A stretch of 63,533 nt of DNA, the filler included, from Octopus bimaculoides (Eukaryota): NCBI RefSeq assembly GCF_001194135.2. It is 6 parts of 6 records of this genome, joined end to end, with 100 filler letters (N's around TTAATTAATTAA, not from the genome) between each part and the next. Parts side by side here need not be neighbours in the genome. Positions count along the whole stretch, not along the records: positions 1 to 15,812 come from NW_026398593.1; 5 more parts are not named here. One strand, written 5' to 3'. This document shows positions 1 through 14,165 of the stretch, piece after piece; position 1 is the first letter of the stretch, and each line of letters opens with the position of its first letter. The translations under genes and the position numbers were made by a program. The notes beneath the pieces are model-generated. The model made no database searches and was not told the origin of the DNA. It was given only the letters and a program-made list of their open reading frames with translations.

Positions 1-290
1 GTGAGTAGATTTGGTAGACGGAAACTAAAAGAAGCCCGTCGTATATATGTATATATATATATGTGTGTGTGTGTTTGTGTGTCTGTGTTTGTCCCCTCCA
101 ACATCGCTTGACAACCGATGCTGGTGTGTTTACTTCCCCGTAACTTAGCGGTTCGGCAAAAGAGACCGATAGAATAAGTACTAGGCTTACAAAAGAATAA
201 GTCCTGGGGGTCGATTTGCTCGAATAAAGGCGGTGCTCCATCATGGCCGCAATCAAATGACTGAAACAAGTAAAAGAGTAAAAGAGTAAT
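1..290 (+). mobile_element. 3' part of tRNA-derived SINE (family A, carries an internal TA/TG microsatellite)
   Basis: Same sequence (gtagacggaaact...gtccccc..catcgcttgacaaccgatgctggtg...ggcggtgctccagcatggcc..gactgaaacaagtaaaaga) recurs at 17670-18490 (-), 58060-58275 (+) and partly at 41150-41280, 56710-56770 and 62393-62970. Confidence 0.85.
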
Positions 291-843: not shown

Positions 844-844
<1 letters not shown>

Positions 845-1460
845 TGGAGTATGTTAGTGAGTTTGTCTATCTTGGAAACAAGATCAGCAAATCAGGTGGA
901 TCAGACGAGGACGTCACTGCAAGAAGCAAGAAGGCTTGGCAAGCCTTCGCTATTCTTCGGCCAGTATGGAAGTCCACTGCCATCTCAACTCGAACTAAAC
1001 TCCGCTTATTTAGTTCAAACGTAAAATCTGTGCTTTTGTATGGCTCTGAAACATGGGGAGCCCCCTGCAGCAACTACAAGAAGATCCAGACCTTCATCAA
1101 CAAATGTCTCCGGCAGATCCCCTATCTGAAGTGGTTCGACAGAGTGCCAAACACCGACCTGCGGGAAAGGGCCAACCAGGAGCCCATACATGTTCAGATT
1201 AGACGAAAGAAATGGAGATGGATCGGACACACACTGCGGAAAGAACCCTCAAACGTGACACGACAATCACTTGACTGGAACCCGCAGGAGAAAAGGAAGC
1301 GAGGACGCCCGAAGCAGACATGGAAGCGGAGCATTTTGGACGAGCTCAGGACCACCGGCCTGACATTTGATGCAGCCAAGAAATACGCCAATGACCGCAA
1401 GAAGTGGAAAATAACTGTTGAGGCCCTATGCTCCAGAAGGGGCAGAAAGGATTAAAAAGA
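844..1460 (+). mobile_element. 5'-truncated RTE-clade LINE (RT thumb/C-terminus)
   Basis: ORF 844-1455 has FVYLG, LLYGSETW, RRKKWRWIGHTLRK and WNPQEKRKRGRPKQTW, typical of RTE ORF C-termini. Frame uninterrupted. Confidence 0.9.
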
Positions 1461-1464
1461 AGTT

Positions 1465-3035
1465 CTTTACTGCTACTTATTGAAACCAATGTGGGCGCTT
1501 CTCGGTAGCCTTAGTCTTCTGTCATAATTCCATTCACATAGAGGATGTTTTATAGGAATACTAGCAAATGCACCCGTCCTCTGGACGGTGTAATTATTGA
1601 AATGGTGCACTCCCGTGGGCGGTTTAAGTTGAATTAGCCCGCAGTTAGAAACCGCTTCAAGTTGATAAGCGTCAAATGTGTAATTACCATTTCCATTGCG
1701 ACTGTCATCTTCCAAGCTAAACTCTGCAAATTTAAATTTTACAAACCACTTTTGAATAGTTGATTCACCTACAGCGTCATCACTATAAACTTCACAAATG
1801 TTTTTGCAAGTTTTTGCAGCATTTTCTTCTTTTTCGAAAAAAAAAAAAAAAAAAGAGAGAGAAGCATTACAATGCGAATAATAAATTTTTAGTTATCCAT
1901 TTCAAATGTCAATAAGGGGCAATCGAGATGCATGATAAGTCTATTTTTAGTCAGGAACAAAAAAAAAAAAAGGCGATCTTTCGATACTAGTCCACCACAA
2001 CTTCCGGTCATTGCGCGCACGCATACTGATTACATGATCGTATAGTGAGTTTATGTGTTTAAAGTTTCAGTTCGGATGGCACCTTACTCNNNNNNNNNNN
2101 NNNNNNNNNNNNNNNNNNNNNNNNNNNNNNNNNNNNNNNNNNNNNNNNNNNNNNNNNNNNNNNNNNNNNNNNNNNNNNNNNNNNNNNNNNNNNNNNNNNN
2201 NNNNNNNNNNNNNNNNNNNNNNNNNNNNNNNNNNNNNNNNNNNNNNNNNNNNNNNNNNNNNNNNNNNNNNNNNNNNNNNNNNNNNNNNNNNNNNNNNNNN
2301 NNNNNNNNNNNNNNNNNNNNNNNNNNNNNNNNNNNNNNNNNNNNNNNNNNNNNNNNNNNNNNNNNNNNNNNNNNNNNNNNNNNNNNNNNNNNNNNNNNNN
2401 NNNNNNNNNNNNNNNNNNNNNNNNNNNNNNNNNNNNNNNNNNNNNNNNNNNNNNNNNNNNNNNNNNNNNNNNNNNNNNNNNAAAAAAAAAAAAAAAAACA
2501 ACCCAGAATGCACTGCAACTTCAAGCAATGCCAAAATTTTAACTGTGTCACATTTCAGGTGTGTTCAATGAAGCGTTTAAAGATTTAGCTTAAAAACGCT
2601 CAAAACTTCCTGAACAACCTAATACATCCAGAATGTTTTATAGGAATATGAAATCAAAAGCCACTACTTAACTGCTGCTTATATAAACCAATGAGGGAGC
2701 CTCTAGGTAGTATTAGTCTTCTATTACAATTCTATTCAAATCTAGGATGTTTTATAGGAGTACTAAATAAACCCCAGTAAATAGCTGCTACTTATACAAA
2801 CTAATGTGAGGGAGTCTAGGTACACTTAGTCCTCTATTATAATTCTACTGACATCTACGATGTTTCAATGGAATATTAAATCAAGGCCAGTACTTAACTG
2901 CTATTTATATACATCAATGAAGGAGCCTCCGGGTATTCTTAGTCTTCAATTATAATTCCTTTCACAGCCAGGATGTTTTATAGGAATATTAAATCAACGC
3001 CAGGTCTTTACAATTACTTATACAAACCAATGTAG
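1465..3035. repeat. Degenerate ~113-114 bp tandem repeat, interrupted by an insertion and a gap
   Basis: Motif gatgttttataggaat recurs near 1543, 2633, 2747, 2860 and 2973; spacing 114/113/113 bp in the right-hand block. Confidence 0.8.
1561..1590 (-). mobile_element. Helitron-like 3' terminus
   Basis: Minus strand reads cacCGTCCagaGGACGggtg-catttg-CTAG|T: a GC-rich hairpin a few nt upstream of CTAG followed by T, the canonical Helitron 3' end. The 5' end is not found (may lie in the 2090-2481 gap). Confidence 0.55.
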
Positions 3036-3227
3036 GTGTTTCCTGACACCCAGATCATGCTTAGGGACATTTGCAATTCTCGTTTTTGGTGAAACATTGC
3101 AAACTAGTGTTTATATTAATTTTAAATATACACATTATCAAAACACTAAATCATCCAATTATTTGCATGGCGAAAACAAAAATACTAATGGCGAAGCGAG
3201 TCCTGAAAGAGCCGAACATTCGAGCCG

Positions 3228-3280
3228 TCTTAACTGATGAGGCAACGAAAATTGCCGAAACCGATGCGTCAGTATTAAGA
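3228..3280 (+). ncRNA. Type I hammerhead-ribozyme-like motif (minimal, Penelope/retrozyme type)
   Basis: tcttaa-CTGATGA(3234-3240)-GGCAA cgaaaa TTGCC-GAAA-C cgatgc G-TC|agta-ttaaga. Intact core, 5-bp stem II, 2-bp stem III, GUC site; stem I pairs only with a 4-nt bulge. Confidence 0.65.
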
Positions 3281-3755
3281 ATCCTCGATCGATACTTTTC
3301 GGGTGGTTATTATCCCTGTTAATGTATATGCTTTTTTATTTATGTGCGTTAACGGCAGCATTGACGGTCACACTGAGAATTTGCGGACATTTACGTATGT
3401 AAATGGTAACAATGAAACTATGGTATGTGGCTGATCATTATATTTTGTATCTTTTCATTTGTCTTGCTCGCTTTACGTTCTGGCGTTTTGCTGAATTTTC
3501 TTGAGAACAATTTTTCTTAGTGGTCAGACCATATGGGGTCTACATTTAGCATATCAGGAGTCCACCTAGTGGTAATTCCTCTTATATATATGTGATATAA
3601 GTTCCTGAATCTTCAGATTTTTTCAATATGTTAGGCCACTGGTTTTAATTTTTACCCTTATTATTTAAATTTATATATACATATATACATATACAAATAT
3701 ATTTCATACATATATATGTATATATATATTAATACATACATGTATATATATTCTA

Positions 3756-3802
<47 letters not shown>

Positions 3803-4312
3803 AATATATATATATATACGTATATACATATATATATATGCATACATATATATGCGTATATNNNNNNNNNNNNNNNNNNNNNNNNNNNNNNNNNNNNNNN
3901 NNNNNNNNNNNNNNNNNNNNNNNNNNNNNNNNNNNNNNNNNNNNNNNNNNNNNNNNNNNNNNNNNNNNNNNNNNNNNNNNNNNNNNNNNNNNNNNNNNNN
4001 NNNNNNNNNNNNNNNNNNNNNNNNNNNNNNNNNNNNNNNNNNNNNNNNNNNNNNNNNNNNNNNNNNNNNNNNNNNNNNNNNNNNNNNNNNNNNNNNNNNN
4101 NNNNNNNNNNNNNNNNNNNNNNNNNNNNNNNNNNNNNNNNNNNNNNNNNNNNNNNNNNNNNNNNNNNNNNNNNNNNNNNNNNNNNNNNNNNNNNNNNNNN
4201 NNNNNNNNNNNNNNNNNNNNNNNNNNNNNNNNNNNNNNNNNNNNNNNNNNNNNNNNNNNNNNNNNNNNNNNNNNNNNNNNNNNNNNNNNNNNNNNNNNNN
4301 NNNNNNNNNNNN

Positions 4313-6162
4313 NCACTTTTCTTGAAACGTTACTTTTAAAGTTACATCCTTAATAAAACACTCGACCTTTGATTTTAATATTACGTAATAACTACCTTTC
4401 TCTGGACTTTCCATCAAAATTTTCTGGTTTGTCCCGGGCTTGTTTGATCGCCATTTTGTCAAATGCTCACTGCAGCCGAGTTTCTTGTAGCAAACAAAGA
4501 GATCCGCTTCTCCCATGCCATCAAAAGTAACAATTTTCACATTCTTCAATTGTGACTTTATCTTCAGTTTAAACATGATTTCTTCTTCAGGGACCGCACT
4601 TAATCCCTCGATTTTCGAGTTCTGGTGTACTGTTCGGATGTATGAAGACAGATGACATACTTTTATACCAACCTTTCTAAAAACTCTCTCTACAGGTTTA
4701 GTGTCATAGCCAAAGTCATAAGCGGACTTCATGAAGTCACAAGCGGCCTCAACGAAAGTAGTTGACGGATGCCAGTAGAAACGATTGGAATGAGCTGCAG
4801 TCTTCAAAACCTTTTTCGTACCCCATCCTTTCCGTCTGCTTAATAGACAGTAAAACCTGTTGAATACCCCACTGAGGTAGTGGACGTCCATACCATCATT
4901 GTAGTCGCCAGCATGTATGATCGACATCCCGTCAGTTGATTGGTTACACACGTTGCGAATTGGATTCGTAGCAACGTCCTCTCCAATTTCCCACTCGTTA
5001 GTCCCTTCTCTACCTAAGAACTTTTCGGCTGCCTCTCCAGCCAAGTCACTGAACGATTCATCGATACCACCCGACTGCCCCTCGTATATCAAGCCCGAAT
5101 GTTCCTCGGTGAAGCAATGGCTTATTTCGTGTGCAATGATATCAAGACTTACTAGCGGCCGATACTCGCTGTTGCCGTCACCAAACGTGAAGTTTTTTCC
5201 ATTGTAAAAAGCATTCACTACGTTTTGGCCATAGTGTACACGGAGAACGATTGGCAGCTCTTTCACCGGAGATACTTTCACCCATTCTCTGTACATATTG
5301 TAGACGATGTTGCCATAGAAAACAGCATCGTTTATCGGAGAATAAGCTCCGTTCACTTCGTCCTTCACACCAGTGTTGCATTTGACATTATAGACATTTC
5401 CTGCCTCATTAGGCAGAAACTCTTCCCCATTCAGATTCACCACTGTGACGATGTCGTTCCCGAAATAACAATCATCGCCTTCACGTGTCACTTCCAAATA
5501 TGGTAGTACTTCTCCGTATCTCAATTTACCTATCAATTTGTTACCTCCGATACCTTTCATTTTGTATTTGTTTCTTGTAGTTTCTAGTGTGTTCCATTTT
5601 TTAACAAGCGTTTCATTATTCGCATCGATTATCATGCAAAATCGATAATTTTTTCCATCAGATACGGCATAATATTGAATTCGATAAACCAGGATTCCTA
5701 CGTCGTCCTTCACGAAGATCATCAATTGAGGTTTATTGTAGTCTATGCGGGCCCCTTCCATAGAAAAGTGGCCGTAATCGACAGCTAATTGCATCGCCTG
5801 CTGCTCGTTCAAATTTGGTATTGTAGAGTTGATGTCATCATCAAGGTTCTGAACCAGTTTACCAGTCACCTGACCAGTGTACACATCGGTTTTGGCGTCT
5901 GTCTCCACAGTGAGGCTGGCATCAAACACCGGAAGTCCTCCATAAGTCTCGCTGTATTTTTTGATGTTGGTTCCTTGCTCACTCGGTGCTGAGTCCACTA
6001 GCTTGATGTCCTCGTCCTTGGTCAGACCGAACAGGTCACGTGTGGTGATCATGTGACTTGGTTGTCGCTTCATTGTCTCGCTCAGGTTATCCACATTCGA
6101 CAGGAACACATCCCTGGCCTGTCGCCATTTTGCTGACGTCACAACGTGGCTCCCCAGGAACG
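4313..6162 (-). CDS. Exon 2 of secreted M4-family zinc metalloprotease (vibriolysin/LasB-like): propeptide, catalytic domain, PPC-like C-terminal domain
   Basis: Motifs GIGGNKLIGKLRYG, NGAYSPINDAVFYG, VHYGQNVVNAFYNG..TFGDG, AHEISH (HExxH at 5131-5117), GGIDESFSDLAGEAAE (third Zn ligand E), DVHYLSGVFNR (catalytic His) and GEADLFV..GSYYVILKS..VTLKVTF (PPC-like). Acceptor TTTCTAG|CG at 6163/6162. The last codon before the N-gap is TGN (4315-4313), probably TGA. Confidence 0.95.
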
Positions 6163-6731
6163 CTAGAAAGATAATAATAATAATGTTAACAACAGCAACA
6201 AACAACAACAACAACAATAATAATAATAATAGATATAAAAGATGGCCTACAGCAAATATTCTGCTCAATACCACAGATTTGCTTGTCAGTTGTTTGACCT
6301 TAACCAGTTGAGCATGTCCCTTAGTGGCTGACGATATGTGCATCTCTGATCATGAGCAGAAGTAGTGGGGGAGCATCATAGCCATGTGCTGAGAGGTAGT
6401 CTTTGGGGTTTGAATAATTCGCCTTTGGAAATATGGGTGTTTTGCTCAACATCCTTATACAAACCTTATTCAGGGACCTTTTGAGCGGGATGGGCTACTT
6501 GACCTGAAGAAAATTCTAACTGGGCCTCACTTGCAAAGGTCATGCGCTGTTTATCTTGATAGGAGATCACCATGTCGCGCACATGTAGTTGTGATGCATG
6601 TGCCTGATGTACCCTTATCAGACGGGTAGTCATGATGGGTATAATGGGCTTCGTACATTTTACCCTAGTGTCACTTTGATGGCAAGCACTGCTCTCTCAC
6701 TCAATAATAATAATAATAACAATAATGATAA

Positions 6732-7080
6732 TGTAGTAACGCCGTGCTCATGCGTAGTCTCACGCATGCGTGGAATTCAACAACCAAGCTTTCCCGCTTC
6801 TATTCTGTCTCTTTCTTGCTGGCCAGCGATTGAGCATGGACGTGTTTAGCTGTCTCTCTCCATCTTTCGAACTTACGCTCGACAGCTCGCTTACGTCCCA
6901 ACAACTATGCTCACACACACAGAAGCTGTAACAACAAACAAGAGCTAAAGATGTATATATTTACCACCTGAATAAATGTTGTATAAGTTGATAGTCTGGA
7001 GTTCAGCGTTCCGTTAATTTTTAATTTTATATAGGAAAGTCAGGTATACATCTAATGATGTATAACCCACTTTCCTATAA
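6732..7080 (+). mobile_element. Unclassified ~350-bp LTR-like repeat, copy 1
   Basis: Starts TGTAGTAAC, contains AATAAA, ends in a ~50-nt hairpin (TATAGGAAAGT...ACTTTCCTATA). Homologous inverted copy at 7601-7956. Confidence 0.75.
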
Positions 7081-7094
7081 TAATATCAATAATG

Positions 7095-7133
<39 letters not shown>

Positions 7134-7134
7134 G

Positions 7135-7260
7135 GTGTATATGAAAAGAAAGAATGGTGGCACAGGACTGAGAACATTGTTTAATGAGTGAAAGGAGAAC
7201 GCTTGTTGAGTATTTGATCAATAGTGACGAAGATCAGCTGTAATATACCGGGGTCATATT
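7135..7260 (+). mobile_element. Short fragment of an R4-like LINE RT-thumb region
   Basis: aaaagaaagaatggtggcacaggact matches aggaaagaaagaatggtggcagaggact near 10371-10398 (RKxGGRGL motif). Confidence 0.55.
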
Positions 7261-7600
7261 ATTATTGATGATTTTAAATACTACAGGAAGAACGATTGGG
7301 ATAAGGGTAATCACTGTGGTTATGGAGGCGAACACAATGCAAGCGCGTTATTTATATACATGTGTATGCACATACTATCGTGCGTGTATATACAAATAAA
7401 GAGAGGAAGAGAGAGATGGGATCTCATAACAACTCTCGTGAGAAGTGAACGAACGACTCATGAAATCACGATGCAATGCAGCAAGGAAAGTATTAACGGC
7501 GAGAATGGAGCTGTAGGAATGTTGGTTATCGGTTATATAGAAATAGTTGTTATTGTAGCTCAGCGGGCTGCGTGTTTGAATCACGTCGGAGGGTCACCGG

Positions 7601-7956
7601 TTATAGGAAAGTGGGTTATACATCATTAGATGTACACCTGCTTTCCTATATTAAATTAAGATATGAACGGTACGCAGAACTCCAAACTATCAACTCAACA
7701 ATATTTATTCAAGGTGGAATATATACAGCTTTACTCTTGGTTGTTGAGACGTCTTCTGTTTGTGAGAACATGGTTGCTGAGACATCGGTATGTTGATGTG
7801 AGCTGTCTGGCGTGAGATCGAAAGATGAGAGAGACAGCTTGACACGTCCATGCTCAATCGCTGGCCAGCAAGAAAGAGACAGAATAAAGAGGGGAAACGC
7901 TTGGATGTTGAATTCCACGCATGCGTGAGACTACGCATGCGCACGGCGTTACTACA
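7601..7956 (-). mobile_element. Unclassified ~350-bp LTR-like repeat, copy 2 (inverted relative to copy 1)
   Basis: Its reverse complement begins tgtagtaacgccgtgc.catgcgtagtctcacgcatgcgtggaattcaac and ends ctttcctataa, as in copy 1. Confidence 0.75.
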
Positions 7957-7959
7957 GAG

Positions 7960-10700
7960 CTATAGCCGGTCATGGTGAATGTTTCCCGCCCGGCACGTCC
8001 GAAACCGCCCGCACCAGGGGCAGTGATCTGGCCTCGGACGGTCGTTATGTCGCAACAGATCACATACACGGTGTGCGCAAAAACAGCCATAAGTGGACGA
8101 AGGAAGAGTATGATACGCTTATTGAATGTCATGGAAGAGCGAAGTTGGAAAGAAGCCGCGGATTAGGCCGACGTACCTTGAAATTTTGGATGGAAAAGGA
8201 CACGTGTCCGATGTCAGAAAACAAACTAATGAACCAAGTGAGAGTGGTTAGGAGGAAGGGTTACTTAACTGGAGTAGAAGTATCTCGGATTCGTGAGAGT
8301 CTGAGAGACCCTCAAACGATGGTCGGAGTTGAAAACAGAGAGGTAGGAGTTGAAAGCAGGGAGAAGAGTAGGCAGAAGGAAGAGGAGAATGAAGATGGGG
8401 CTGTTAATGATGGGGAACAGGAATGTTATACAGTGAACCCTGATACTGTGGTGGGTGGACATGCAGGGGAAACGAACCAACTGGATAATGAATTGTTTGA
8501 AATTCAAAGACGACTCACCGAGTTGATGAAGAAAAAATCCCCCTGAATATGAAAAGGGTAGACAAGAGCGTGATAAATAAAGTAACACAAAAGATAAATG
8601 CTGTCATACCATACATCCAGACGGAGGACATCACACAAACATGGAATCTTCTCCGAGCCATTGCGCTGCTTGTTGAGGAGAAATTACAGCTTAAGGGAAC
8701 AAAAAATGGTGGAGCAAAAGAACCATGGTGGAAACGACGCATTGAAAGGGACATGATGCGGGAAAGGCAAGATCTAGGAAAAATTGAGAAATGGTTAAGA
8801 GGAAACTGGAAAAATGGGGAAAAGACCGACTGAGAAAAATTAGAGAAGAAATATAAAATACGAAAGAACGGGTTTGATGAAGTAATAGAGCAGTTAAAAC
8901 AGAGGATCATGGCAAAAAGCCAGAAGATCAGAAGATTTGTGAACAGAAAGAAGCAGTTCGAGGAGAACAGTTTGTTCAAAACTAACCCGAAGCAATTCTT
9001 ACGAACGTTAGAAGGAGACAATGGGGAAAATGTTGCTCCTGATGCAAATCAAGCCAAGGAGTTCTGGAGCGGATAATGGGGAAACAATGTGGTGCATAAA
9101 AGGGATGCAATGTGGATAGGAACTATCAAGACAGAATTACAAGGAGGAAACAAGCAAAGGAATATTGTCATAGGCACGGGTGATGTGAAAGAACAAGTGG
9201 GTAAAGTGCCTAAATGGAAAGCCCCCGGACCAGATGGGATTCATGGCTTCTGGCTGAAGAGATGCCATGCGGTGAATGGAAGACTAGCAGCCCAATTGAA
9301 TGAGCGTGTCCAGAAAGGTACAGTCCCTGCGTAGATGGTGACTGGGAGGACAACACTTGTAATGAAAGATAGAAGAAAGGGGAATATTGTGGCAAACTAC
9401 CGTCCCATAGTATGCCTAAACATAATCTGGAAGATGTCACTGGAATATGTGCGGAAAAGACATATACATTCCTGGTACAGGAAGAAATACTACCAAGGGA
9501 ACAAAAAGGATGTAGGAAGAGTTCTCAGGGTACCAAAGATTACCTGGTCATCGATAAAACAGTTTTCAGGTATTGTAAAAAAACATCTATGGCTTGGATT
9601 GACTTTAAGAAGGCATATGTTATGATGCCTCATTCTTGGATCGTTGAATGCCTGCAGATGTTTGGCGTTGCTGACAACACCACAAATTTTCTGATGCATA
9701 GCATGAAAGAGTGGAAAACCAAATTGTAAAGTAATGTATTCCTGGGAGAAGTTAATATTAAAAGGGGAATCTTCCAAGGTGACTTGTTTTTTTCCCTTAC
9801 TATATGTAATTGCACTAATACCCATAACAATGACCCTTAGGAAAGTTAAGATGGGTTACCGATGTGAGAAGAAAAGCCCATCATTGAACCATCTTCTGTT
9901 TAGGGATCACCTGAAATTGTTTGGGAAATCTGAAAAACAGATAGATTCCTTAACCGAAACAGTCCAGAAGTGTGGTAGGGACATCGGTATGGAATTTGGG
10001 ATGACCAAATGCTCAGTGCTTAATATGGAAAGAGGGAAGGAAGCAGCCTGCAGGGGATTTCGGTTACCACCAGAAGTGACCATGGGTGAATCGGACGGTA
10101 ATATTTAGGGATTTTGGAGCTGGATGACATTCTACACGGAGAAATGAAAGTCAAGGTCAGCGAGGCGCATCAAAAACGGGTGAAGATGGTGTTGAAATCC
10201 GACCTGAATGCCAAAAATTTGACTACCACAATGATTATCTGGGCAGTTGCAGTGGTCAGATATAGAGCGTCCATCCTCAAATGGACTAAGGAGGAAATAT
10301 CAACACTGGACAGAAGGACGAGAAAATTGATGACACTGCATGGGTTGCTAACCCGAAAGCAAACTTAAACAGGAAAGAAAGAATGGTGGCAGAGGACTAA
10401 TTAGTGGATGTGAGAGCCTTGCACAAAGCGCCGCCACGATAAAGTGTATGTATCTTCATTGGCTCTTATGCCGTAAATACCAATATGAAGTAGCAGAGAA
10501 CTGGTATGAGTATGTACCAAGTAAAGTTATGCAGGAGGATGGAAAAGTACTGTCAGATCATTGATGTAGCCACACCAAATGACATGAATGTTGTGAGTAA
10601 AGGGGTTGAAAAAAAATCGCCAAGGACTCCGAATTGAAAGTGGAAATGGTAAGACTGTATGGAGGGTCAAAGTTGGGAACAAAACAGGAGAGTTGAGACT
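7960..10700 (+). mobile_element. Decayed near-full-length R4/Dong-like non-LTR retrotransposon (RT plus restriction-like endonuclease), antisense within the protease intron
   Basis: Broken frames give HKWTKEE (N-terminal Myb-like), EPWWKRRIE, KWKAPGPDGIHGFWLK, NYRPIVCL, EQKGCRK, AWIDFKKAY, LNHLLFRDHLKLF, and a REL tail RRHDKV...IIDVATPNDMNV. Multiple stops and frameshifts. Confidence 0.85.
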
Positions 10701-10870
10701 TACAAGGAAACCGAACGAAAACAGACATGGAGAACGACGGGAAAATAGTGAACGCTGCGAGAAATAGTTTCTTGGAAAAGGGAAAAGATAGAAGAGGAGA
10801 AGAGAGAAGACGTCCAGTCCTTAGAACGTTCGAATAGGAAAAGAAAGATAGACGATGGTCATGTGTGAGC

Positions 10871-10920
<50 letters not shown>

Positions 10921-11765
10921 AGAAAGCGGGAGAGAGANNNNNNNNNNNNNNNNNNNNNNNNNNNNNNNNNNNNNNNNNNNNNNNNNNNNNNNNNNNNNNN
11001 NNNNNNNNNNNNNNNNNNNNNNNNNNNNNNNNNNNNNNNNNNNNNNNNNNNNNNNNNNNNNNNNNNNNNNNNNNNNNNNNNNNNNNNNNNNNNNNNNNNN
11101 NNNNNNNNNNNNNNNNNNNNNNNNNNNNNNNNNNNNNNNNNNNNNNNNNNNNNNNNNNNNNNNNNNNNNNNNNNNNNNNNNNNNNNNNNNNNNNNNNNNN
11201 NNNNNNNNNNNNNNNNNNNNNNNNNNNNNNNNNNNNNNNNNNNNNNNNNNNNNNNNNNNNNNNNNNNNNNNNNNNNNNNNNNNNNNNNNNNNNNNNNNNN
11301 NNNNNNNNNNNNNNNNNNNNNNNNNNNNNNNNNNNNNNNNNNNNNNNNNNNNNNNNNNNNNNNNNNNNNNNNNNNNNNNNNNNNNNNNNNNNNNNNNNNN
11401 NNNNNNNNNNNNNNNNNNNNNNNNNNNNNNNNNNNNNNNNNNNNNNNNNNNNNNNNNNNNNNNNNNNNNNNNNNNNNNNNNNNNNNNNNNNNNNNNNNNN
11501 NNNNNNNNNNNNNNNNNNNNNNNNNNNNNNNNNNNNNNNNNNNNNNNNNNNNNNNNNNNNNNNNNNNNNNNNNNNNNNNNNNNNNNNNNNNNNNNNNNNN
11601 NNNNNNNNNNNNNNNNNNNNNNNNNNNNNNNNNNNNNNNNNNNNNNNNNNNNNNNNNNNNNNNNNNNNNNNNNNNNNNNNNNNNNNNNNNNNNNNNNNNN
11701 NNNNNNNNNNNNNNNNNNNNNNNNNNNNNNNNNNNNNNNNNNNNNNNNNNNNNNNNNNNNNNNNN

Positions 11766-11833
<68 letters not shown>

Positions 11834-11838
11834 ATCCA

Positions 11839-11869
<31 letters not shown>

Positions 11870-11872
11870 CTA

Positions 11873-11947
<75 letters not shown>

Positions 11948-12079
11948 ATCTATCTATTTGCAAATATAGACACATACATAAATTCATATGCAATTACATA
12001 CAAACCTATGCACAAATTTCTGCATACACACACTCATATACAAACAGATACAAACTTAGAAAATATAGGTTTAACTCAC

Positions 12080-12128
12080 CGAATAATATAACAAAAAGGA
12101 AGCGAATCCCAACGCTACGGGCAGCCAT
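12080..12128 (-). CDS. Exon 1 (signal peptide) of the M4 protease
   Basis: Minus strand gataATGGCTGCCCGTAGCGTTGGGATTCGCTTCCTTTTTGTTATATTATTCG|GTGAGT = MAARSVGIRFLFVILF + G. Good Kozak context (A at -3, G at +4), consensus donor, and phase 1 matching the exon 2 acceptor. Confidence 0.8.
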
Positions 12129-12293
12129 TATCTTTCTCTCCCTCTGTCACACTGGTCGGTCGAAAGTGGAAAACAGCAGCAAGTGGTCAAGTACAGCCAC
12201 TACAGAGACGAAATAGTGGACTTTCACACAGGAAACAGCTATAATAGTAACCAGAGACAAACATCCGAGGCAGCCGAATTTTTAGGTGGTGGA

Positions 12294-12550
12294 CCTTATA
12301 TGTAGTTGAGGGCTGGGCCACACTGTGAGGTCTTTCAGTCTGTCAGGGAGAGAAAGAGCCAGAGAGGACGCCCTTGCTGTGAAAGAGTGTAACCTCACAC
12401 TCGAGTTATGAGACTTTTGATCTAAGTGTTTGCTTTTATATGAGTGGAGAAGCGAATGGAGAGGTTTGCAGATGGACGAAAACAGACAACAATGTCGCTC
12501 TCTGCCTGTCCCAACTCGCGTTCTCTCCCTCATACTCCCCCCCCGCCTCC
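12294..12550 (-). promoter_or_regulatory. Candidate promoter of the M4 gene
   Basis: ATATAAGG (TATA-like) at 12301-12294 on the minus strand, about 170 nt upstream of the ATG; GC-box-like ccccgcctcc at 12541-12550; non-repetitive sequence. Motif-only inference. Confidence 0.3.
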
Positions 12551-12787
12551 CTACTTCCATCGACGCTGTCTGTCGTCGCGTAATCATCTTGTTTCGCCTC
12601 GTTAATCAAGTATTATTCAAAATTAAACAAATATTTTCTTCACAAACAAACTATTCATCCCATGTTCTAGAACAAACTCACAGACACACAACCCCCCCAC
12701 ACACAAACATACACACACACGCACACAAACATGCACACACACATGCACATATGTATATAATCATACATGCTGCATATATTAATTAAT

Positions 12788-13397: not shown

Positions 13398-14086
13398 TAC
13401 AGGCACAACAGAAACAGGAAGTAAGAGCGAGAGAAAGTTGTGGCGAAAGAGTACAGCAGGGTTCGCCACCATCCCCTGCCGGGGGCCTCGTGGGGCTTTT
13501 AAGGCGGCGAGCTGGCCGAGACCTTAGCACACCGGGCGAAATGCTTAGCGATATTCGTCTGTCTTTACGTTCTGAGTTCAAATTTCTCCGAGGTCGACTT
13601 TACCTTTCATCCTTTTGGGAGCGATAAATCAAGTACCAGTTGCGTACTGGGGTCGATCTAATCGACTGGCCCCTCCTCCCCAAAAATTTCGGGCCTTGAG
13701 CCTAGAGTACAAAAGAATAAACCATATATTTGACTCGACCGGAAAGTTATCAAGCATTTCTCCTGGACAATTAACATTTTATTAAATGTTAACAAATTCC
13801 AAAGTATAGCTTGTTATGTATATTGGGAAACACTAATTACCAGTAATTTTATAATTTGTTTTACTTCATCACAGTTATAGATAAATCTGTGTCCATCTTT
13901 TCCTTCGATTTCTTTCAATTAGTTCACGGCCATTTGGCTACCATTGGTTAACCATCCTCTGGCGGACCCTCACGGAGCTTTAGGTGTTTTCGCTCAATAT
14001 AAACACTCACAACGCCCGGTCTGGGAATCGAAACCGCGATCCTATGACCGCGAGTCCGCTTCCCTAACCACTGGGCCATTGCGCCT

Positions 14087-14090
<4 letters not shown>
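13398..14090 (-). mobile_element. tRNA-derived SINE (family C) split by an inserted family B SINE and ~230 bp of other sequence
   Basis: Head on the minus strand GTGGAGGCGCAATGGCCCAGTGG...GGTTTCGATTCCC (A/B boxes) at 14090-14020; body at 13398-13500 matches the copy at 22519-22850. Confidence 0.8.
13503..13720 (+). mobile_element. tRNA-derived SINE family B
   Basis: ggcggcgagctggc...gagttcaaatt...ggtcgactttacctttcatcc...aagtaccagttgcgtactggggtcgat; roughly ten related copies in the window. Confidence 0.9.
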
Positions 14091-14143
<53 letters not shown>

Positions 14144-14165
14144 CACATACATACGCACATATATA

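What the first reader, a model, noticed from the sequence alone, without database searches (positions are those of the whole stretch)
12080..12128. Hidden signal-peptide exon 5.9 kb upstream completes the protease
Seen: ATG in Kozak context, 16 codons ending in a hydrophobic run, then G|GTGAGT. It is in the phase needed by the TTTCTAG|CG acceptor at 6162, giving MAARSVGIRFLFVILF-A-FLGSHVVTSA/KWRQ. The ORF track instead runs 60 codons into intronic microsatellite. A single phase-1 intron within the signal peptide is a common arrangement in animal secreted proteins (established). Here it suggests the export signal was recruited from host sequence after the gene arrived (inference). It is the best in-window evidence against contamination.
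Basis: partly seen in the sequence, partly recalled or inferred. Interest (0 to 1): 0.75.

Follow-up and report, generated by a model that had tools for sequence, protein, structure and literature searches.

The report
Annotated first exon of octopus protease
The short upstream piece is very probably the first coding exon of a bacterial-type secreted protease gene of Octopus bimaculoides, but it is already in the public gene model and the gene's bacterial origin is already published, so the finding is correct and ordinary.

Summary
On the minus strand, an ATG at 12128 with A at -3 and G at +4 opens 16 codons plus one base. A G|GTGAGT donor follows, and a CTTTCTAG|CG acceptor at 6163/6162 restores the frame. 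The joined N-terminus is MAARSVGIRFLFVILF-A-FLGSHVVTSA|KWRQ.

The exon is not hidden. The window is Octopus bimaculoides scaffold LGKD02103728.1, and the NCBI protein XP_014783435.1 starts at exactly this ATG. Liu et al. 2018 list this protein as ZnMP7, one of 12 bacterial-origin genes.

The same tiny exon and phase-1 intron occur in:
- the O. bimaculoides paralogue;
- two O. sinensis genes;
- Argonauta hians;
- Haliotis asinina, with a two-codon offset.

Between octopus species the promoter and exon 1 are conserved, and the similarity stops just past the donor.

The claim that the export signal was recruited from host sequence is not shown. Eleven of the 27 signal-peptide residues, including the cleavage site, lie in exon 2. 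Bacterial homologues carry their own signal peptide at the same place. Intron gain within a pre-existing signal therefore fits equally well. No spliced RNA could be examined here.

In passing: the last 80 residues of XP_014783435.1 are probably an artefact of an assembly gap.

The parts
12037..12749 (-). Conserved block holding the putative promoter, the 5' leader, exon 1 and the first ~40 nt of the intron. TATAAGG lies at 12300-12294, 172 nt upstream of the ATG.
   Evidence: blastn of the window against the O. sinensis orthologue locus L016 gives 82.8% identity over 751 aligned columns. A four-way alignment shows TATAAGG kept in window and O. sinensis paralogue, but altered in O. bimaculoides paralogue, with similarity ending just after GGTGAGTTAAAC. 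The promoter role is inferred; no transcription start site data were available.
12080..12128 (-). Coding part of exon 1: ATG plus 16 codons (MAARSVGIRFLFVILF) plus the first base of Ala17. It encodes the n-region and most of the h-region of the signal peptide.
   Evidence: Read directly. It matches the N-terminus of XP_014783435.1, whose gene span of 10,656 bp equals window 12128..1473. The three other Octopus genes examined keep the 49-nt length and phase 1; Argonauta has 55 nt.
12074..12079 (-). 5' splice donor GTGAGT, in phase 1.
   Evidence: GTGAGT is kept in all six annotated loci examined (window, L002, L014, L016, L003, L015).
6163..12079 (-). Phase-1 intron, 5,917 nt as assembled. The true length is unknown because it contains an 828-N gap at 10938-11765.
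   Evidence: Orthologous introns measure about 2.5 kb (L002), 4.7 kb (L003), 6.2 kb (L014), 8.6 kb (L015) and 11.3 kb (L016). No similarity to the orthologous intron apart from dispersed repeats.
6163..6189 (-). 3' splice region: the branch-point-like TTAAC (6189-6185), a pyrimidine/ATT tract and CTTTCTAG (6170-6163).
   Evidence: A pyrimidine tract plus AG sits at the homologous place in L002, L003, L013, L014 and L016; L015 has one two codons further from the conserved Lys. The branch point is inferred from the yUnAy consensus only.
6131..6162 (-). Start of exon 2: the last two bases of Ala17 plus FLGSHVVTSA. This is the end of the h-region and the c-region of the signal peptide. Predicted cleavage lies between Ala27 (6133-6131) and Lys28 (6130-6128).
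   Evidence: Small residues at -3 and -1 (T, A) are kept in relatives as VTSA|K, VMSA|K and VMTA|Q. Cleavage is inferred from the -3/-1 rule and was not measured.
4313..6130 (-). Rest of exon 2: the propeptide, the M4 catalytic domains (HEISH 5131-5117; GGIDESFSD 5071-5045; DVHYLSG 4888-4868), a degenerate PPC-like C-terminal domain, and a stop codon TG[N] at 4315-4313 that is cut by the assembly gap.
   Evidence: Pfam PF01447 (83 bits) and PF02868 (89 bits), both above their cut-offs. The O. sinensis orthologue ends ...GAAGAAAAGTGA where the window reads ...CAAGAAAAGTGNNN. The published ZnMP7 cDNA fragment maps to 4842..4583 at 257/260. PPC scores only E = 0.16.

Best explanation
Window 12128-12080 (minus strand) is the first coding exon of the Octopus bimaculoides gene for XP_014783435.1. 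This protein is called 'elastase-like' by NCBI and ZnMP7 by Liu et al. 2018. It is a thermolysin/pseudolysin-type (family M4) zinc metalloprotease of bacterial ancestry.

Proposed mechanism:
1. Transcription starts a little upstream of the exon, from a promoter region conserved between octopus species.
2. The spliceosome removes a phase-1 GT-AG intron of about 5.9 kb, joining G(12080) to CG(6162-6161).
3. Translation from the ATG at 12128 gives a 27-residue signal peptide. Its n-region and most of its h-region come from exon 1. The end of the h-region, the c-region and the cleavage site (VTSA|K) come from exon 2.
4. The signal directs the pre-pro-enzyme into the ER. There it is cleaved, and the protein is secreted as a pro-protease.

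Shown: the sequence features, the identity with the public gene model, and conservation of exon, phase and position in five other mollusc genes. Inferred: actual splicing in vivo, the transcription start site, and the signal-peptide cleavage and secretion.

The evolutionary origin of exon 1 is not resolved. It could be a captured host exon or the product of an intron gained inside the inherited bacterial signal. Either way the architecture is probably old, apparently predating the gastropod-cephalopod split.
For: - The sequence features are at the stated coordinates.
- XP_014783435.1 (P0001) is 100% identical over all 632 joined residues including the N-terminus. Its gene span on LGKD02103728.1 equals window 12128..1473.
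- Homologous N-termini occur in the O. vulgaris, O. sinensis, O. bimaculoides paralogue and Argonauta proteins.
- Genomic loci share the structure:
  - L002 (O. bimaculoides paralogue): 49-nt exon, GTGAGT, TCTAG|CT.
  - L014 and L016 (O. sinensis): 49 nt, GTGAGT, TCTAG|CG.
  - L003 (Argonauta): 55 nt, GTGAGT, TTTAG|TT, same position.
  - L015 (Haliotis asinina): 28 nt, GTGAGT, TCCAG|TT, phase 1 inside the signal peptide.

- Promoter plus exon 1 is 83% conserved against O. sinensis. The intron is not conserved, apart from its first ~40 nt and dispersed repeats.
- In L002, L003, L013, L014 and L015 there is no in-frame ATG between the acceptor and the nearest upstream stop, so those genes cannot start without the upstream exon.
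- The chance expectation for such an exon candidate is about 1%.
- The protein is a complete M4 pre-pro-enzyme with HExxH and the third zinc ligand. Bacterial relatives are secreted enzymes with a signal peptide at the same place.
- Expression of the gene was shown by cDNA PCR, exon 2 only (PMC6011040; mapped).
Against: - No spliced RNA was seen here. The public model is a computational prediction whose RNA support I could not inspect, and the published cDNA fragment does not cross the junction.
- The Logan contigs that looked like full-length mRNAs (P0008) are more probably genomic.
- SignalP was not available, so the signal-peptide call rests on anatomy.
- The intron contains an 828-N gap, so an additional small exon or an assembly error inside it cannot be excluded.
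- The scaffold is unplaced in the chromosome-level assembly.
Confidence: 0.9

Rival explanations
1. No splicing. Translation starts at the in-frame ATG at 6343, and the microsatellite-encoded stretch (LLLLLLLLLFVAVVNIIIIIFLAFLG) serves as a long signal or anchor.
For: The frame is open for 62 codons upstream of the acceptor and has an ATG at codon -60. The translated (ATT)n/(GTT)n is hydrophobic. The O. sinensis orthologue also has in-frame ATGs in its microsatellite.
Against: Five related loci (L002, L003, L013, L014, L015) have no in-frame ATG before the first upstream stop. The microsatellite differs in length and content between loci. A strong acceptor sits exactly at the conserved position. 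The public model uses the upstream exon.
Confidence: 0.03
2. A different first exon is used, either always or as an alternative. Candidates are the phase-1 segment starting at 6767 (MRETTHEHGVTTLSLLLLLLLL, GTGAG donor) or an exon hidden in the 828-N gap or beyond the window.
For: The 6767 candidate is in phase and hydrophobic. The gap at 10938-11765 is unread.
Against: The 6767 ATG lies just outside a dispersed repeat (6732-6171 matches several places in L016), and its hydrophobic run is microsatellite. It is not at a conserved position. No orthologous gene model has an extra exon; all have two coding exons.
Confidence: 0.05
3. Origin, reader's version. Exon 1, with its promoter and start codon, was captured from host sequence. 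The N-terminal half of the original bacterial signal was discarded into the intron.
For: Exon 1 carries the promoter-proximal leader and the start codon, which a bacterial insert lacks in eukaryotic form. Exon 1 shows no similarity to bacterial signal peptides.
Against: The lack of similarity is uninformative, because shuffled controls score as high or higher. The signal keeps the bacterial length and position, and half of it lies in exon 2. No donor host gene for the exon was identified. The event is too old for a 16-codon exon to be traced, since abalone shares the structure.
Confidence: 0.45
4. Origin, alternative. The bacterial gene arrived with its own signal peptide, which works in eukaryotes. 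A spliceosomal intron was later inserted into the signal-coding region, and the present exon 1 is the diverged 5' end of the transferred ORF.
For: Pre-pro architecture and signal length are unchanged relative to bacterial homologues. Phase-1 introns are over-represented near signal-peptide cleavage sites in eukaryotic genes generally (PMC1626468). Intron gain after bacterial-to-eukaryote transfer is documented elsewhere (PMC3584928, title and abstract).
Against: There is no detectable sequence similarity between the signals. The exon junction (TCG|CG) is not a classic AG|G proto-splice site. No intronless animal copy was confirmed: the apparently contiguous ORFs P0008, P0011 and P0012 have a pyrimidine tract plus AG at the homologous spot and are probably intron read-through.
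Confidence: 0.45

Closest known systems
NCBI gene model XP_014783435.1 ('elastase-like', Octopus bimaculoides), which is ZnMP7 of Liu et al. 2018 (PMC6011040)
   Same: It is the same locus. The annotated coding sequence starts at the same ATG (12128) and uses the same donor and acceptor. The protein is 100% identical over residues 1-631 of the 632 joined residues. The gene is already reported as acquired from bacteria and as expressed.
   Different: The public model continues from ...TFQE across two assembly gaps into a third exon (window 1716-1473) that adds 80 residues with no counterpart in any orthologue. Here the protein is read as 632 residues ending TFQEK, with the stop codon cut by the gap. 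The 2018 paper does not mention introns.
Bacterial pre-pro M4 metalloproteases of the pseudolysin (LasB) / vibriolysin type, e.g. the Dyella, Luteibacter, Rhodanobacter and Vibrio proteins P0013-P0088
   Same: 31-39% identity over 70-100% of the length. Both have a signal peptide, an FTP-type propeptide, the catalytic domains Peptidase_M4 and Peptidase_M4_C, HExxH plus the Glu ligand, and a C-terminal beta domain.
   Different: The bacterial genes are uninterrupted, and their signal peptide is read by the Sec machinery. The octopus gene has a spliceosomal intron inside the signal, an added conserved K/Q-W-R-Q-A-R-D motif after the cleavage site, and only a degenerate PPC domain (E = 0.16).
Other mollusc M4 genes: O. 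bimaculoides XP_014767445.1 (ZnMP1), O. sinensis XP_029652155.1 and XP_029653636.1, Argonauta hians LOC115226755-like, and Haliotis asinina XP_067681597.1
   Same: All have two coding exons, a tiny first exon (28-55 nt of coding sequence), a GTGAGT donor and a phase-1 intron inside the signal peptide. All animal sequences form one clade in a quick NJ tree (96% of 200 bootstraps).
   Different: Intron lengths range from 2.5 to 11.3 kb. The Haliotis intron lies 12 rather than 10 residues before the conserved Lys. The exon 1 sequences are barely alignable beyond the genus Octopus.
Horizontally acquired secreted proteins of other animals that now have introns, e.g. the centipede venom families (PMC7864903)
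   Same: These are bacterial secreted proteins now encoded by intron-bearing animal genes. In that work too, introns are used as the argument against contamination, and the origin of the signal peptide is left open.
   Different: They are different protein families and lineages. No venom or other role has been shown for the octopus enzyme.

Membership tests
U2-type GT-AG spliceosomal intron | A 5' GT with consensus GTRAGT, and a 3' pyrimidine tract followed by AG | tested here: met
   GTGAGT at 12079-12074 and CTTTCTAG at 6170-6163.
U2-type GT-AG spliceosomal intron | Removal restores one continuous reading frame that matches homologous proteins | tested here: met
   The joined frame is open for 632 codons and equals XP_014783435.1. 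Its N-terminus aligns with orthologues.
U2-type GT-AG spliceosomal intron | Position and phase conserved in orthologues and paralogues | tested here: met
   Phase 1 at the same residue in L002, L014, L016 and L003, and two codons away in Haliotis L015.
U2-type GT-AG spliceosomal intron | Spliced RNA observed across the junction | not testable with these tools
   No RNA-seq mapping was available. An N-terminal protein search found no transcript-derived hits. The published cDNA fragment lies wholly in exon 2.
Eukaryotic secretory (Sec61/SRP) signal peptide | Basic n-region, hydrophobic h-region of about 7-15 residues, and a c-region with small uncharged residues at -3 and -1 | tested here: met
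   R4 and R9; F10-L19 with a Kyte-Doolittle 10-residue mean of 3.3; T25 and A27 before K28. The pattern is kept in relatives.
Eukaryotic secretory (Sec61/SRP) signal peptide | Predicted by a trained classifier (SignalP), or shown to be cleaved and to direct export | not testable with these tools
   No such predictor or experiment was available.
Peptidase family M4 (thermolysin/pseudolysin) | Pfam Peptidase_M4 and Peptidase_M4_C above their gathering scores | tested here: met
   83.4 bits against a cut-off of 22.4, and 89.1 bits against 24.4.
Peptidase family M4 (thermolysin/pseudolysin) | HExxH zinc site, a third Glu ligand about 20 residues downstream, and the catalytic His | tested here: met
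   HEISH 361-365, GGIDESFSD 381-389 and DVHYLSG 442-448. The assignment to the thermolysin residues is from my own knowledge of the family.
Peptidase family M4 (thermolysin/pseudolysin) | FTP/PepSY propeptide | tested here: inconclusive
   FTP scores 19.4 bits, below the cut-off of 21. The region does align with bacterial propeptides.
Gene acquired by an animal from bacteria (HGT) and integrated, not contamination | Nearest relatives outside the animal clade are bacterial; the animal copies sit in animal chromosomes with introns and host repeats | tested here: met
   All non-mollusc named hits are bacterial. The NJ tree places one animal clade among bacterial sequences (sampling was small). 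Loci lie on chromosome-scale records of four species. There is a retrotransposon remnant in the intron. The transfer is published in PMC6011040.

The most novel reading that the evidence does not exclude
The architecture may be shared by the whole mollusc M4 clade, from abalone to octopus, and by unidentified eukaryotes in ENA assemblies. It consists of a tiny first exon, a phase-1 intron inside the signal peptide, and a single large exon for the rest. If so, a bacterial secreted protease was made into a eukaryote-style secreted gene once, soon after a single transfer that predates the gastropod-cephalopod split. The structure would then have stayed frozen through all later duplications. That would make the family a dated, multi-copy case for studying how transferred genes obtain promoters, start codons and export signals. 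This point is absent from the 2018 data paper; its companion paper was not available.
Probability: 0.5. Interest if true: 0.35.

Novelty: already known. Interest (0 to 1): 0.15.

Why it matters
For this window it matters mostly as quality control. The intron confirms that this bacterial-type protease is a true octopus gene.

Three small corrections follow.
1. The exon is not unannotated.
2. The 'host-recruited export signal' is not demonstrated.
3. The public protein probably carries a false 80-residue tail caused by an assembly gap.

There is also a caution for protein catalogues. Prokaryote-style ORF calling on eukaryotic DNA turns the pyrimidine tract upstream of this acceptor into plausible-looking but probably false signal peptides (P0008, P0011, P0012, P0123).

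The wider biological point is that the intron architecture is shared from abalone to octopus. This is modestly interesting for the study of gene domestication after horizontal transfer.

Tried and rejected
- Transcript search by protein. A search with only the first 129 residues, meant to pull transcript-derived partial proteins, scored 7 candidates and returned one exon-2-only O. vulgaris fragment. It gave nothing useful.
- Exact look-up. The O. vulgaris orthologue P0002 is not on record.
- False mRNA evidence. I first took the 2.3-2.5 kb Logan contigs encoding P0008 as spliced mRNAs, because they hold a complete ORF with leader. I rejected this. All of them end in (CA)n at the 3' end and the longest (L004) also at the 5' end, and TTGTTATTTTCAG|TG sits exactly at the homologous phase-1 position. 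They are probably genomic, and the N-terminus MNEPHLLLFS is probably intron read-through. The same reading applies to P0011, P0012 and P0123.
- Signal-peptide homology. I tested whether the octopus signal peptide, whole or the exon 1 part alone, resembles the signal peptides of 107 bacterial homologues more than shuffled versions do. It does not (p = 0.31 for the best-ranked bacterial signal (P0045); p = 0.95-1.0 for the maximum over all). The origin question stays open.
- Tree. The first tree attempt timed out. It was redone with my own distance and NJ code.
- Literature. Searches for 'octopus' with thermolysin, pseudolysin or peptidase M4 found nothing relevant. [quoted passage not shown]
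- Unknown hosts. The host organisms of the ENA contigs L010-L012 and of the Logan runs could not be identified.
- Paralogue. XP_052827948.1 (L017) was fetched to look for an unannotated signal exon. Its model spans several gaps and nothing clear was found.

Full report
**1. What is in the sequence**

All features of this gene lie on the minus strand.
- An ATG at 12128-12126 sits in the context gatAATGG, with A at -3 and G at +4.
- It opens 16 codons, MAARSVGIRFLFVILF, followed by one extra base (G at 12080).
- The next six bases are GTGAGT (12079-12074).
- At 6170-6163 the sequence CTTTCTAG ends a tract rich in T and ATT repeats. A TTAAC motif lies 24 nt upstream of the exon boundary.
- Exon sequence resumes with CG at 6162.
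- Joining G to CG gives Ala17, and the frame then reads FLGSHVVTSAKWRQ... It stays open for 632 codons, until the assembly gap that begins at 4313.

**2. Is it more than chance?**

I counted stop-free, ATG-initiated, phase-1 segments in the 9.65 kb upstream of the acceptor. Four end at GTRAGT and eleven end at GTRAG.

Only the one at 12128 combines a GTRAGT donor with a hydrophobic core. Two others score as hydrophobic but are translated microsatellite with only a GTRAG donor. One starts at 6767. The other starts at 14148 and, at 58 codons, exceeds the 35-codon limit of the shuffle test.

In 300 dinucleotide-preserving shuffles of the upstream sequence, 1% contained at least one candidate with a GTRAGT donor, a length of at most 35 codons and a hydrophobic core. 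The pattern alone is suggestive. The comparative evidence below is what is decisive.

**3. What the locus is**

The joined protein is a family M4 (thermolysin-type) zinc metalloprotease.
- Pfam Peptidase_M4 scores 83 bits and Peptidase_M4_C scores 89 bits, both far above their cut-offs. An FTP propeptide match falls just below its threshold.
- HEISH (residues 361-365), the downstream Glu ligand in GGIDESFSD (381-389) and the DVHYLSG histidine motif are all present.

The best database hit is 'elastase [Octopus bimaculoides]', 712 residues. It is 100% identical over the best alignment, which covers the whole 632-residue query, N-terminus included. Residue 632 (K in the query) is N in XP. It is XP_014783435.1.

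Its gene lies on LGKD02103728.1, an 88-kb unplaced scaffold of assembly GCA_001194135.2. The gene spans 10,656 bp, which is exactly window 12128..1473.

Liu et al. 2018 (PMC6011040) list XP_014783435.1 as ZnMP7. It is one of seven Zn-metalloproteinases among twelve O. bimaculoides genes that they conclude came from bacteria. They amplified and sequenced a cDNA fragment of it. That fragment maps to window 4842-4583 at 257 of 260 positions, wholly inside exon 2. The paper never mentions introns.

**4. Conservation of the exon and the intron**

| Locus | Coding part of exon 1 | Donor | Acceptor | Intron |
|---|---|---|---|---|
| O. bimaculoides paralogue XP_014767445.1 (ZnMP1, chromosome CM046607.1) | 49 nt | ...TTATTCG\|GTGAGTTT | ...CCCGTCTAG\|CT | about 2.5 kb |
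| O. sinensis orthologue XP_029652155.1 | 49 nt | ...TTACTCG\|GTGAGTAAAAC | ...ATCTTTCTAG\|CG | 11.3 kb |
| O. sinensis paralogue XP_029653636.1 | 49 nt | ...ATACTTG\|GTGAGTTAAAC | ...CTCTCTAG\|CG | about 6.2 kb |
| Argonauta hians | 55 nt | GTGAGT | TTTAG\|TT | about 4.7 kb |
| Haliotis asinina XP_067681597.1 | 28 nt | A\|GTGAGT | TTCCAG\|TT | 8.6 kb |

- In Argonauta the split codon is, as in Octopus, ten residues before the conserved [KQ]WRQ motif.
- The abalone gene also has exactly two coding exons. Its intron is in phase 1 inside the signal peptide, twelve residues before the Lys that aligns with the octopus Lys28.
- A genomic contig of another Octopus species (L013) shows the same acceptor, with an in-frame stop eleven codons upstream.
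- Between O. bimaculoides and the O. sinensis orthologue, a 713-nt block (window 12749-12037) is 83% identical. It covers the region upstream of the ATG, exon 1 and about 40 nt of intron.
- After that block nothing aligns except dispersed repeats, until the last ~70 nt of the intron and exon 2 (89.5%).
- The four-way alignment shows a TATAAGG element (12300-12294) and several leader motifs conserved. Similarity ends right after GGTGAGTTAAAC.
- In five loci (L002, L003, L013, L014, L015) there is no in-frame ATG between the acceptor and the nearest upstream stop. Those genes cannot start without the upstream exon.

**5. How it most likely works**

The joined N-terminus has a basic n-region (R4, R9), a hydrophobic core (F10-L19) and a c-region with Thr at -3 and Ala at -1 before Lys28. 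The relatives keep the same pattern. This is the anatomy of a secretory signal peptide.

Bacterial M4 relatives carry their own signal peptide of 22-26 residues at the same place, directly before the homologous propeptide.

The most likely mechanism is as follows.
1. Transcription starts from the conserved upstream region.
2. The phase-1 intron is removed.
3. Translation begins at 12128.
4. The protein is targeted to the ER co-translationally and cleaved after VTSA.
5. A pro-M4 protease is secreted.

The sequence features and their conservation are shown. Splicing in vivo, the transcription start site, cleavage and secretion are inferred.

I could not inspect RNA.

**6.

This is not established, for four reasons.
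- Only 16 of the 27 signal residues are in exon 1. The rest, with the cleavage site, are contiguous with the protease in exon 2.
- The alternative fits the unchanged pre-pro architecture equally well: an intron may have been inserted into an inherited bacterial signal. An excess of phase-1 introns near signal-peptide cleavage sites is a documented general feature (PMC1626468).
- I tested for residual similarity between the octopus signal and those of 107 bacterial homologues. It is not above shuffled controls, either for the whole signal or for the exon 1 part. That is uninformative either way.
- Apparently intronless homologues (P0008, P0011, P0012, P0123) are probably not intronless. Each has a pyrimidine tract plus AG at exactly the homologous phase-1 position, and their 'signal peptides' are probably translated intron.

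What can be said is that the architecture is old. A quick neighbour-joining tree (43 sequences, 542 columns) puts all animal sequences in one clade (96% of 200 bootstraps). It has two subclades, and the intron is present in both. The tree uses few bacterial sequences and a simple method, so a single ancient transfer is probable but not proven.

**7. Against contamination**

The intron is spliceosomal. It holds microsatellites and frame-shifted reverse-transcriptase fragments on the opposite strand. Related genes sit on chromosome-scale records of O. bimaculoides, O. sinensis, Argonauta hians and Haliotis asinina. Liu et al. reached the same conclusion by PCR.

**8. Comparison with what is known, and verdict**

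The feature is the already-annotated first coding exon of a gene already published as horizontally acquired. Novelty is therefore 'already known', and interest is low.

The additions from this work are minor:
- the intron architecture is shared from abalone to octopus;
- the origin of the signal exon is undecidable with present data;
- the public protein's C-terminus is probably wrong.

On the last point, the window reads ...CAAGAAAAGTG followed by N, where the O. sinensis orthologue reads ...GAAGAAAAGTGA, a stop. The public model uses a GT at the gap edge and splices to window 1716. This adds 80 residues that no orthologue has and that match no Pfam family.

Noticed in passing
window 4313-4318 and 1473-1716 (minus strand): The public protein XP_014783435.1 (712 aa) probably has a false C-terminus. 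Exon 2 reads ...TTTCAAGAAAAGTG and then runs into the N gap, where the O. sinensis orthologue has ...GAAGAAAAGTGA (stop). The model instead splices from AA|GTGNNN at the gap edge to an acceptor at 1716. This adds 80 residues absent from all orthologues and without any Pfam match. The true product is probably 632 aa ending TFQEK.
   Followed up: partly
window 8073-10368 (+ strand), inside the intron: A run of short ORFs in different frames, antisense to the protease gene. Weak RVT_1 matches (E = 3-5e-4) cover successive parts of the reverse-transcriptase profile at 9412-9729 and 9734-10108. This looks like a decayed non-LTR retrotransposon inside the intron.
   Followed up: partly
window 844-1455 (+ strand): A 203-aa ORF downstream of the gene matches Pfam DUF6451 (E = 5e-18). 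It follows a long poly-T/poly-CTT tract. It is probably the tail of another mobile-element ORF.
   Followed up: no
window 1-290, 13398-13667 and 13951-14089: These segments match many places in the O. sinensis locus L016 at 84-92% identity. Window 158-289 matches four consecutive tandem copies of about 130 nt at L016 3113-3623. They are dispersed or tandem octopus repeats flanking the gene.
   Followed up: no
L004 (P0008), L010 (P0012), L011 (P0011); also P0123: Prokaryote-style gene calls on eukaryotic contigs give these M4 homologues plausible-looking N-terminal 'signal peptides', e.g. MLVSVQHIPFLFSFCLSVIA. These are probably the translated pyrimidine tract of the conserved phase-1 intron, because each has Py-tract plus AG exactly 10 codons plus a split codon before the conserved [KRH]W. 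This is a trap for protein catalogues built from metagenome assemblies.
   Followed up: partly
L002 1558-1910: About 8 kb upstream of the paralogue ZnMP1 there is a near-identical second copy of its promoter/leader and the first 13 nt of exon 1 (ATGGCTACGTGTAG). It breaks off into (GA)n and simple repeats and a 4.8-kb N gap (2064-6908) begins about 150 nt further on. This is either an assembly duplication or a truncated duplicate.
   Followed up: no
L017 (O. bimaculoides XP_052827948.1, 'neutral protease'): This more distant M4 paralogue groups with the abalone gene. It is modelled without any signal peptide, with a duplicated propeptide segment, and across several N gaps. It is probably mis-modelled and may lack the same small 5' exon.
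   Followed up: partly
window 12264-12187 (minus strand): An upstream ATG in the putative 5' leader opens a 25-codon ORF that ends 58 nt before the main ATG. It is absent from the paralogue and from the O. sinensis paralogue L014 leader in the alignment, so it is probably without significance.
   Followed up: no
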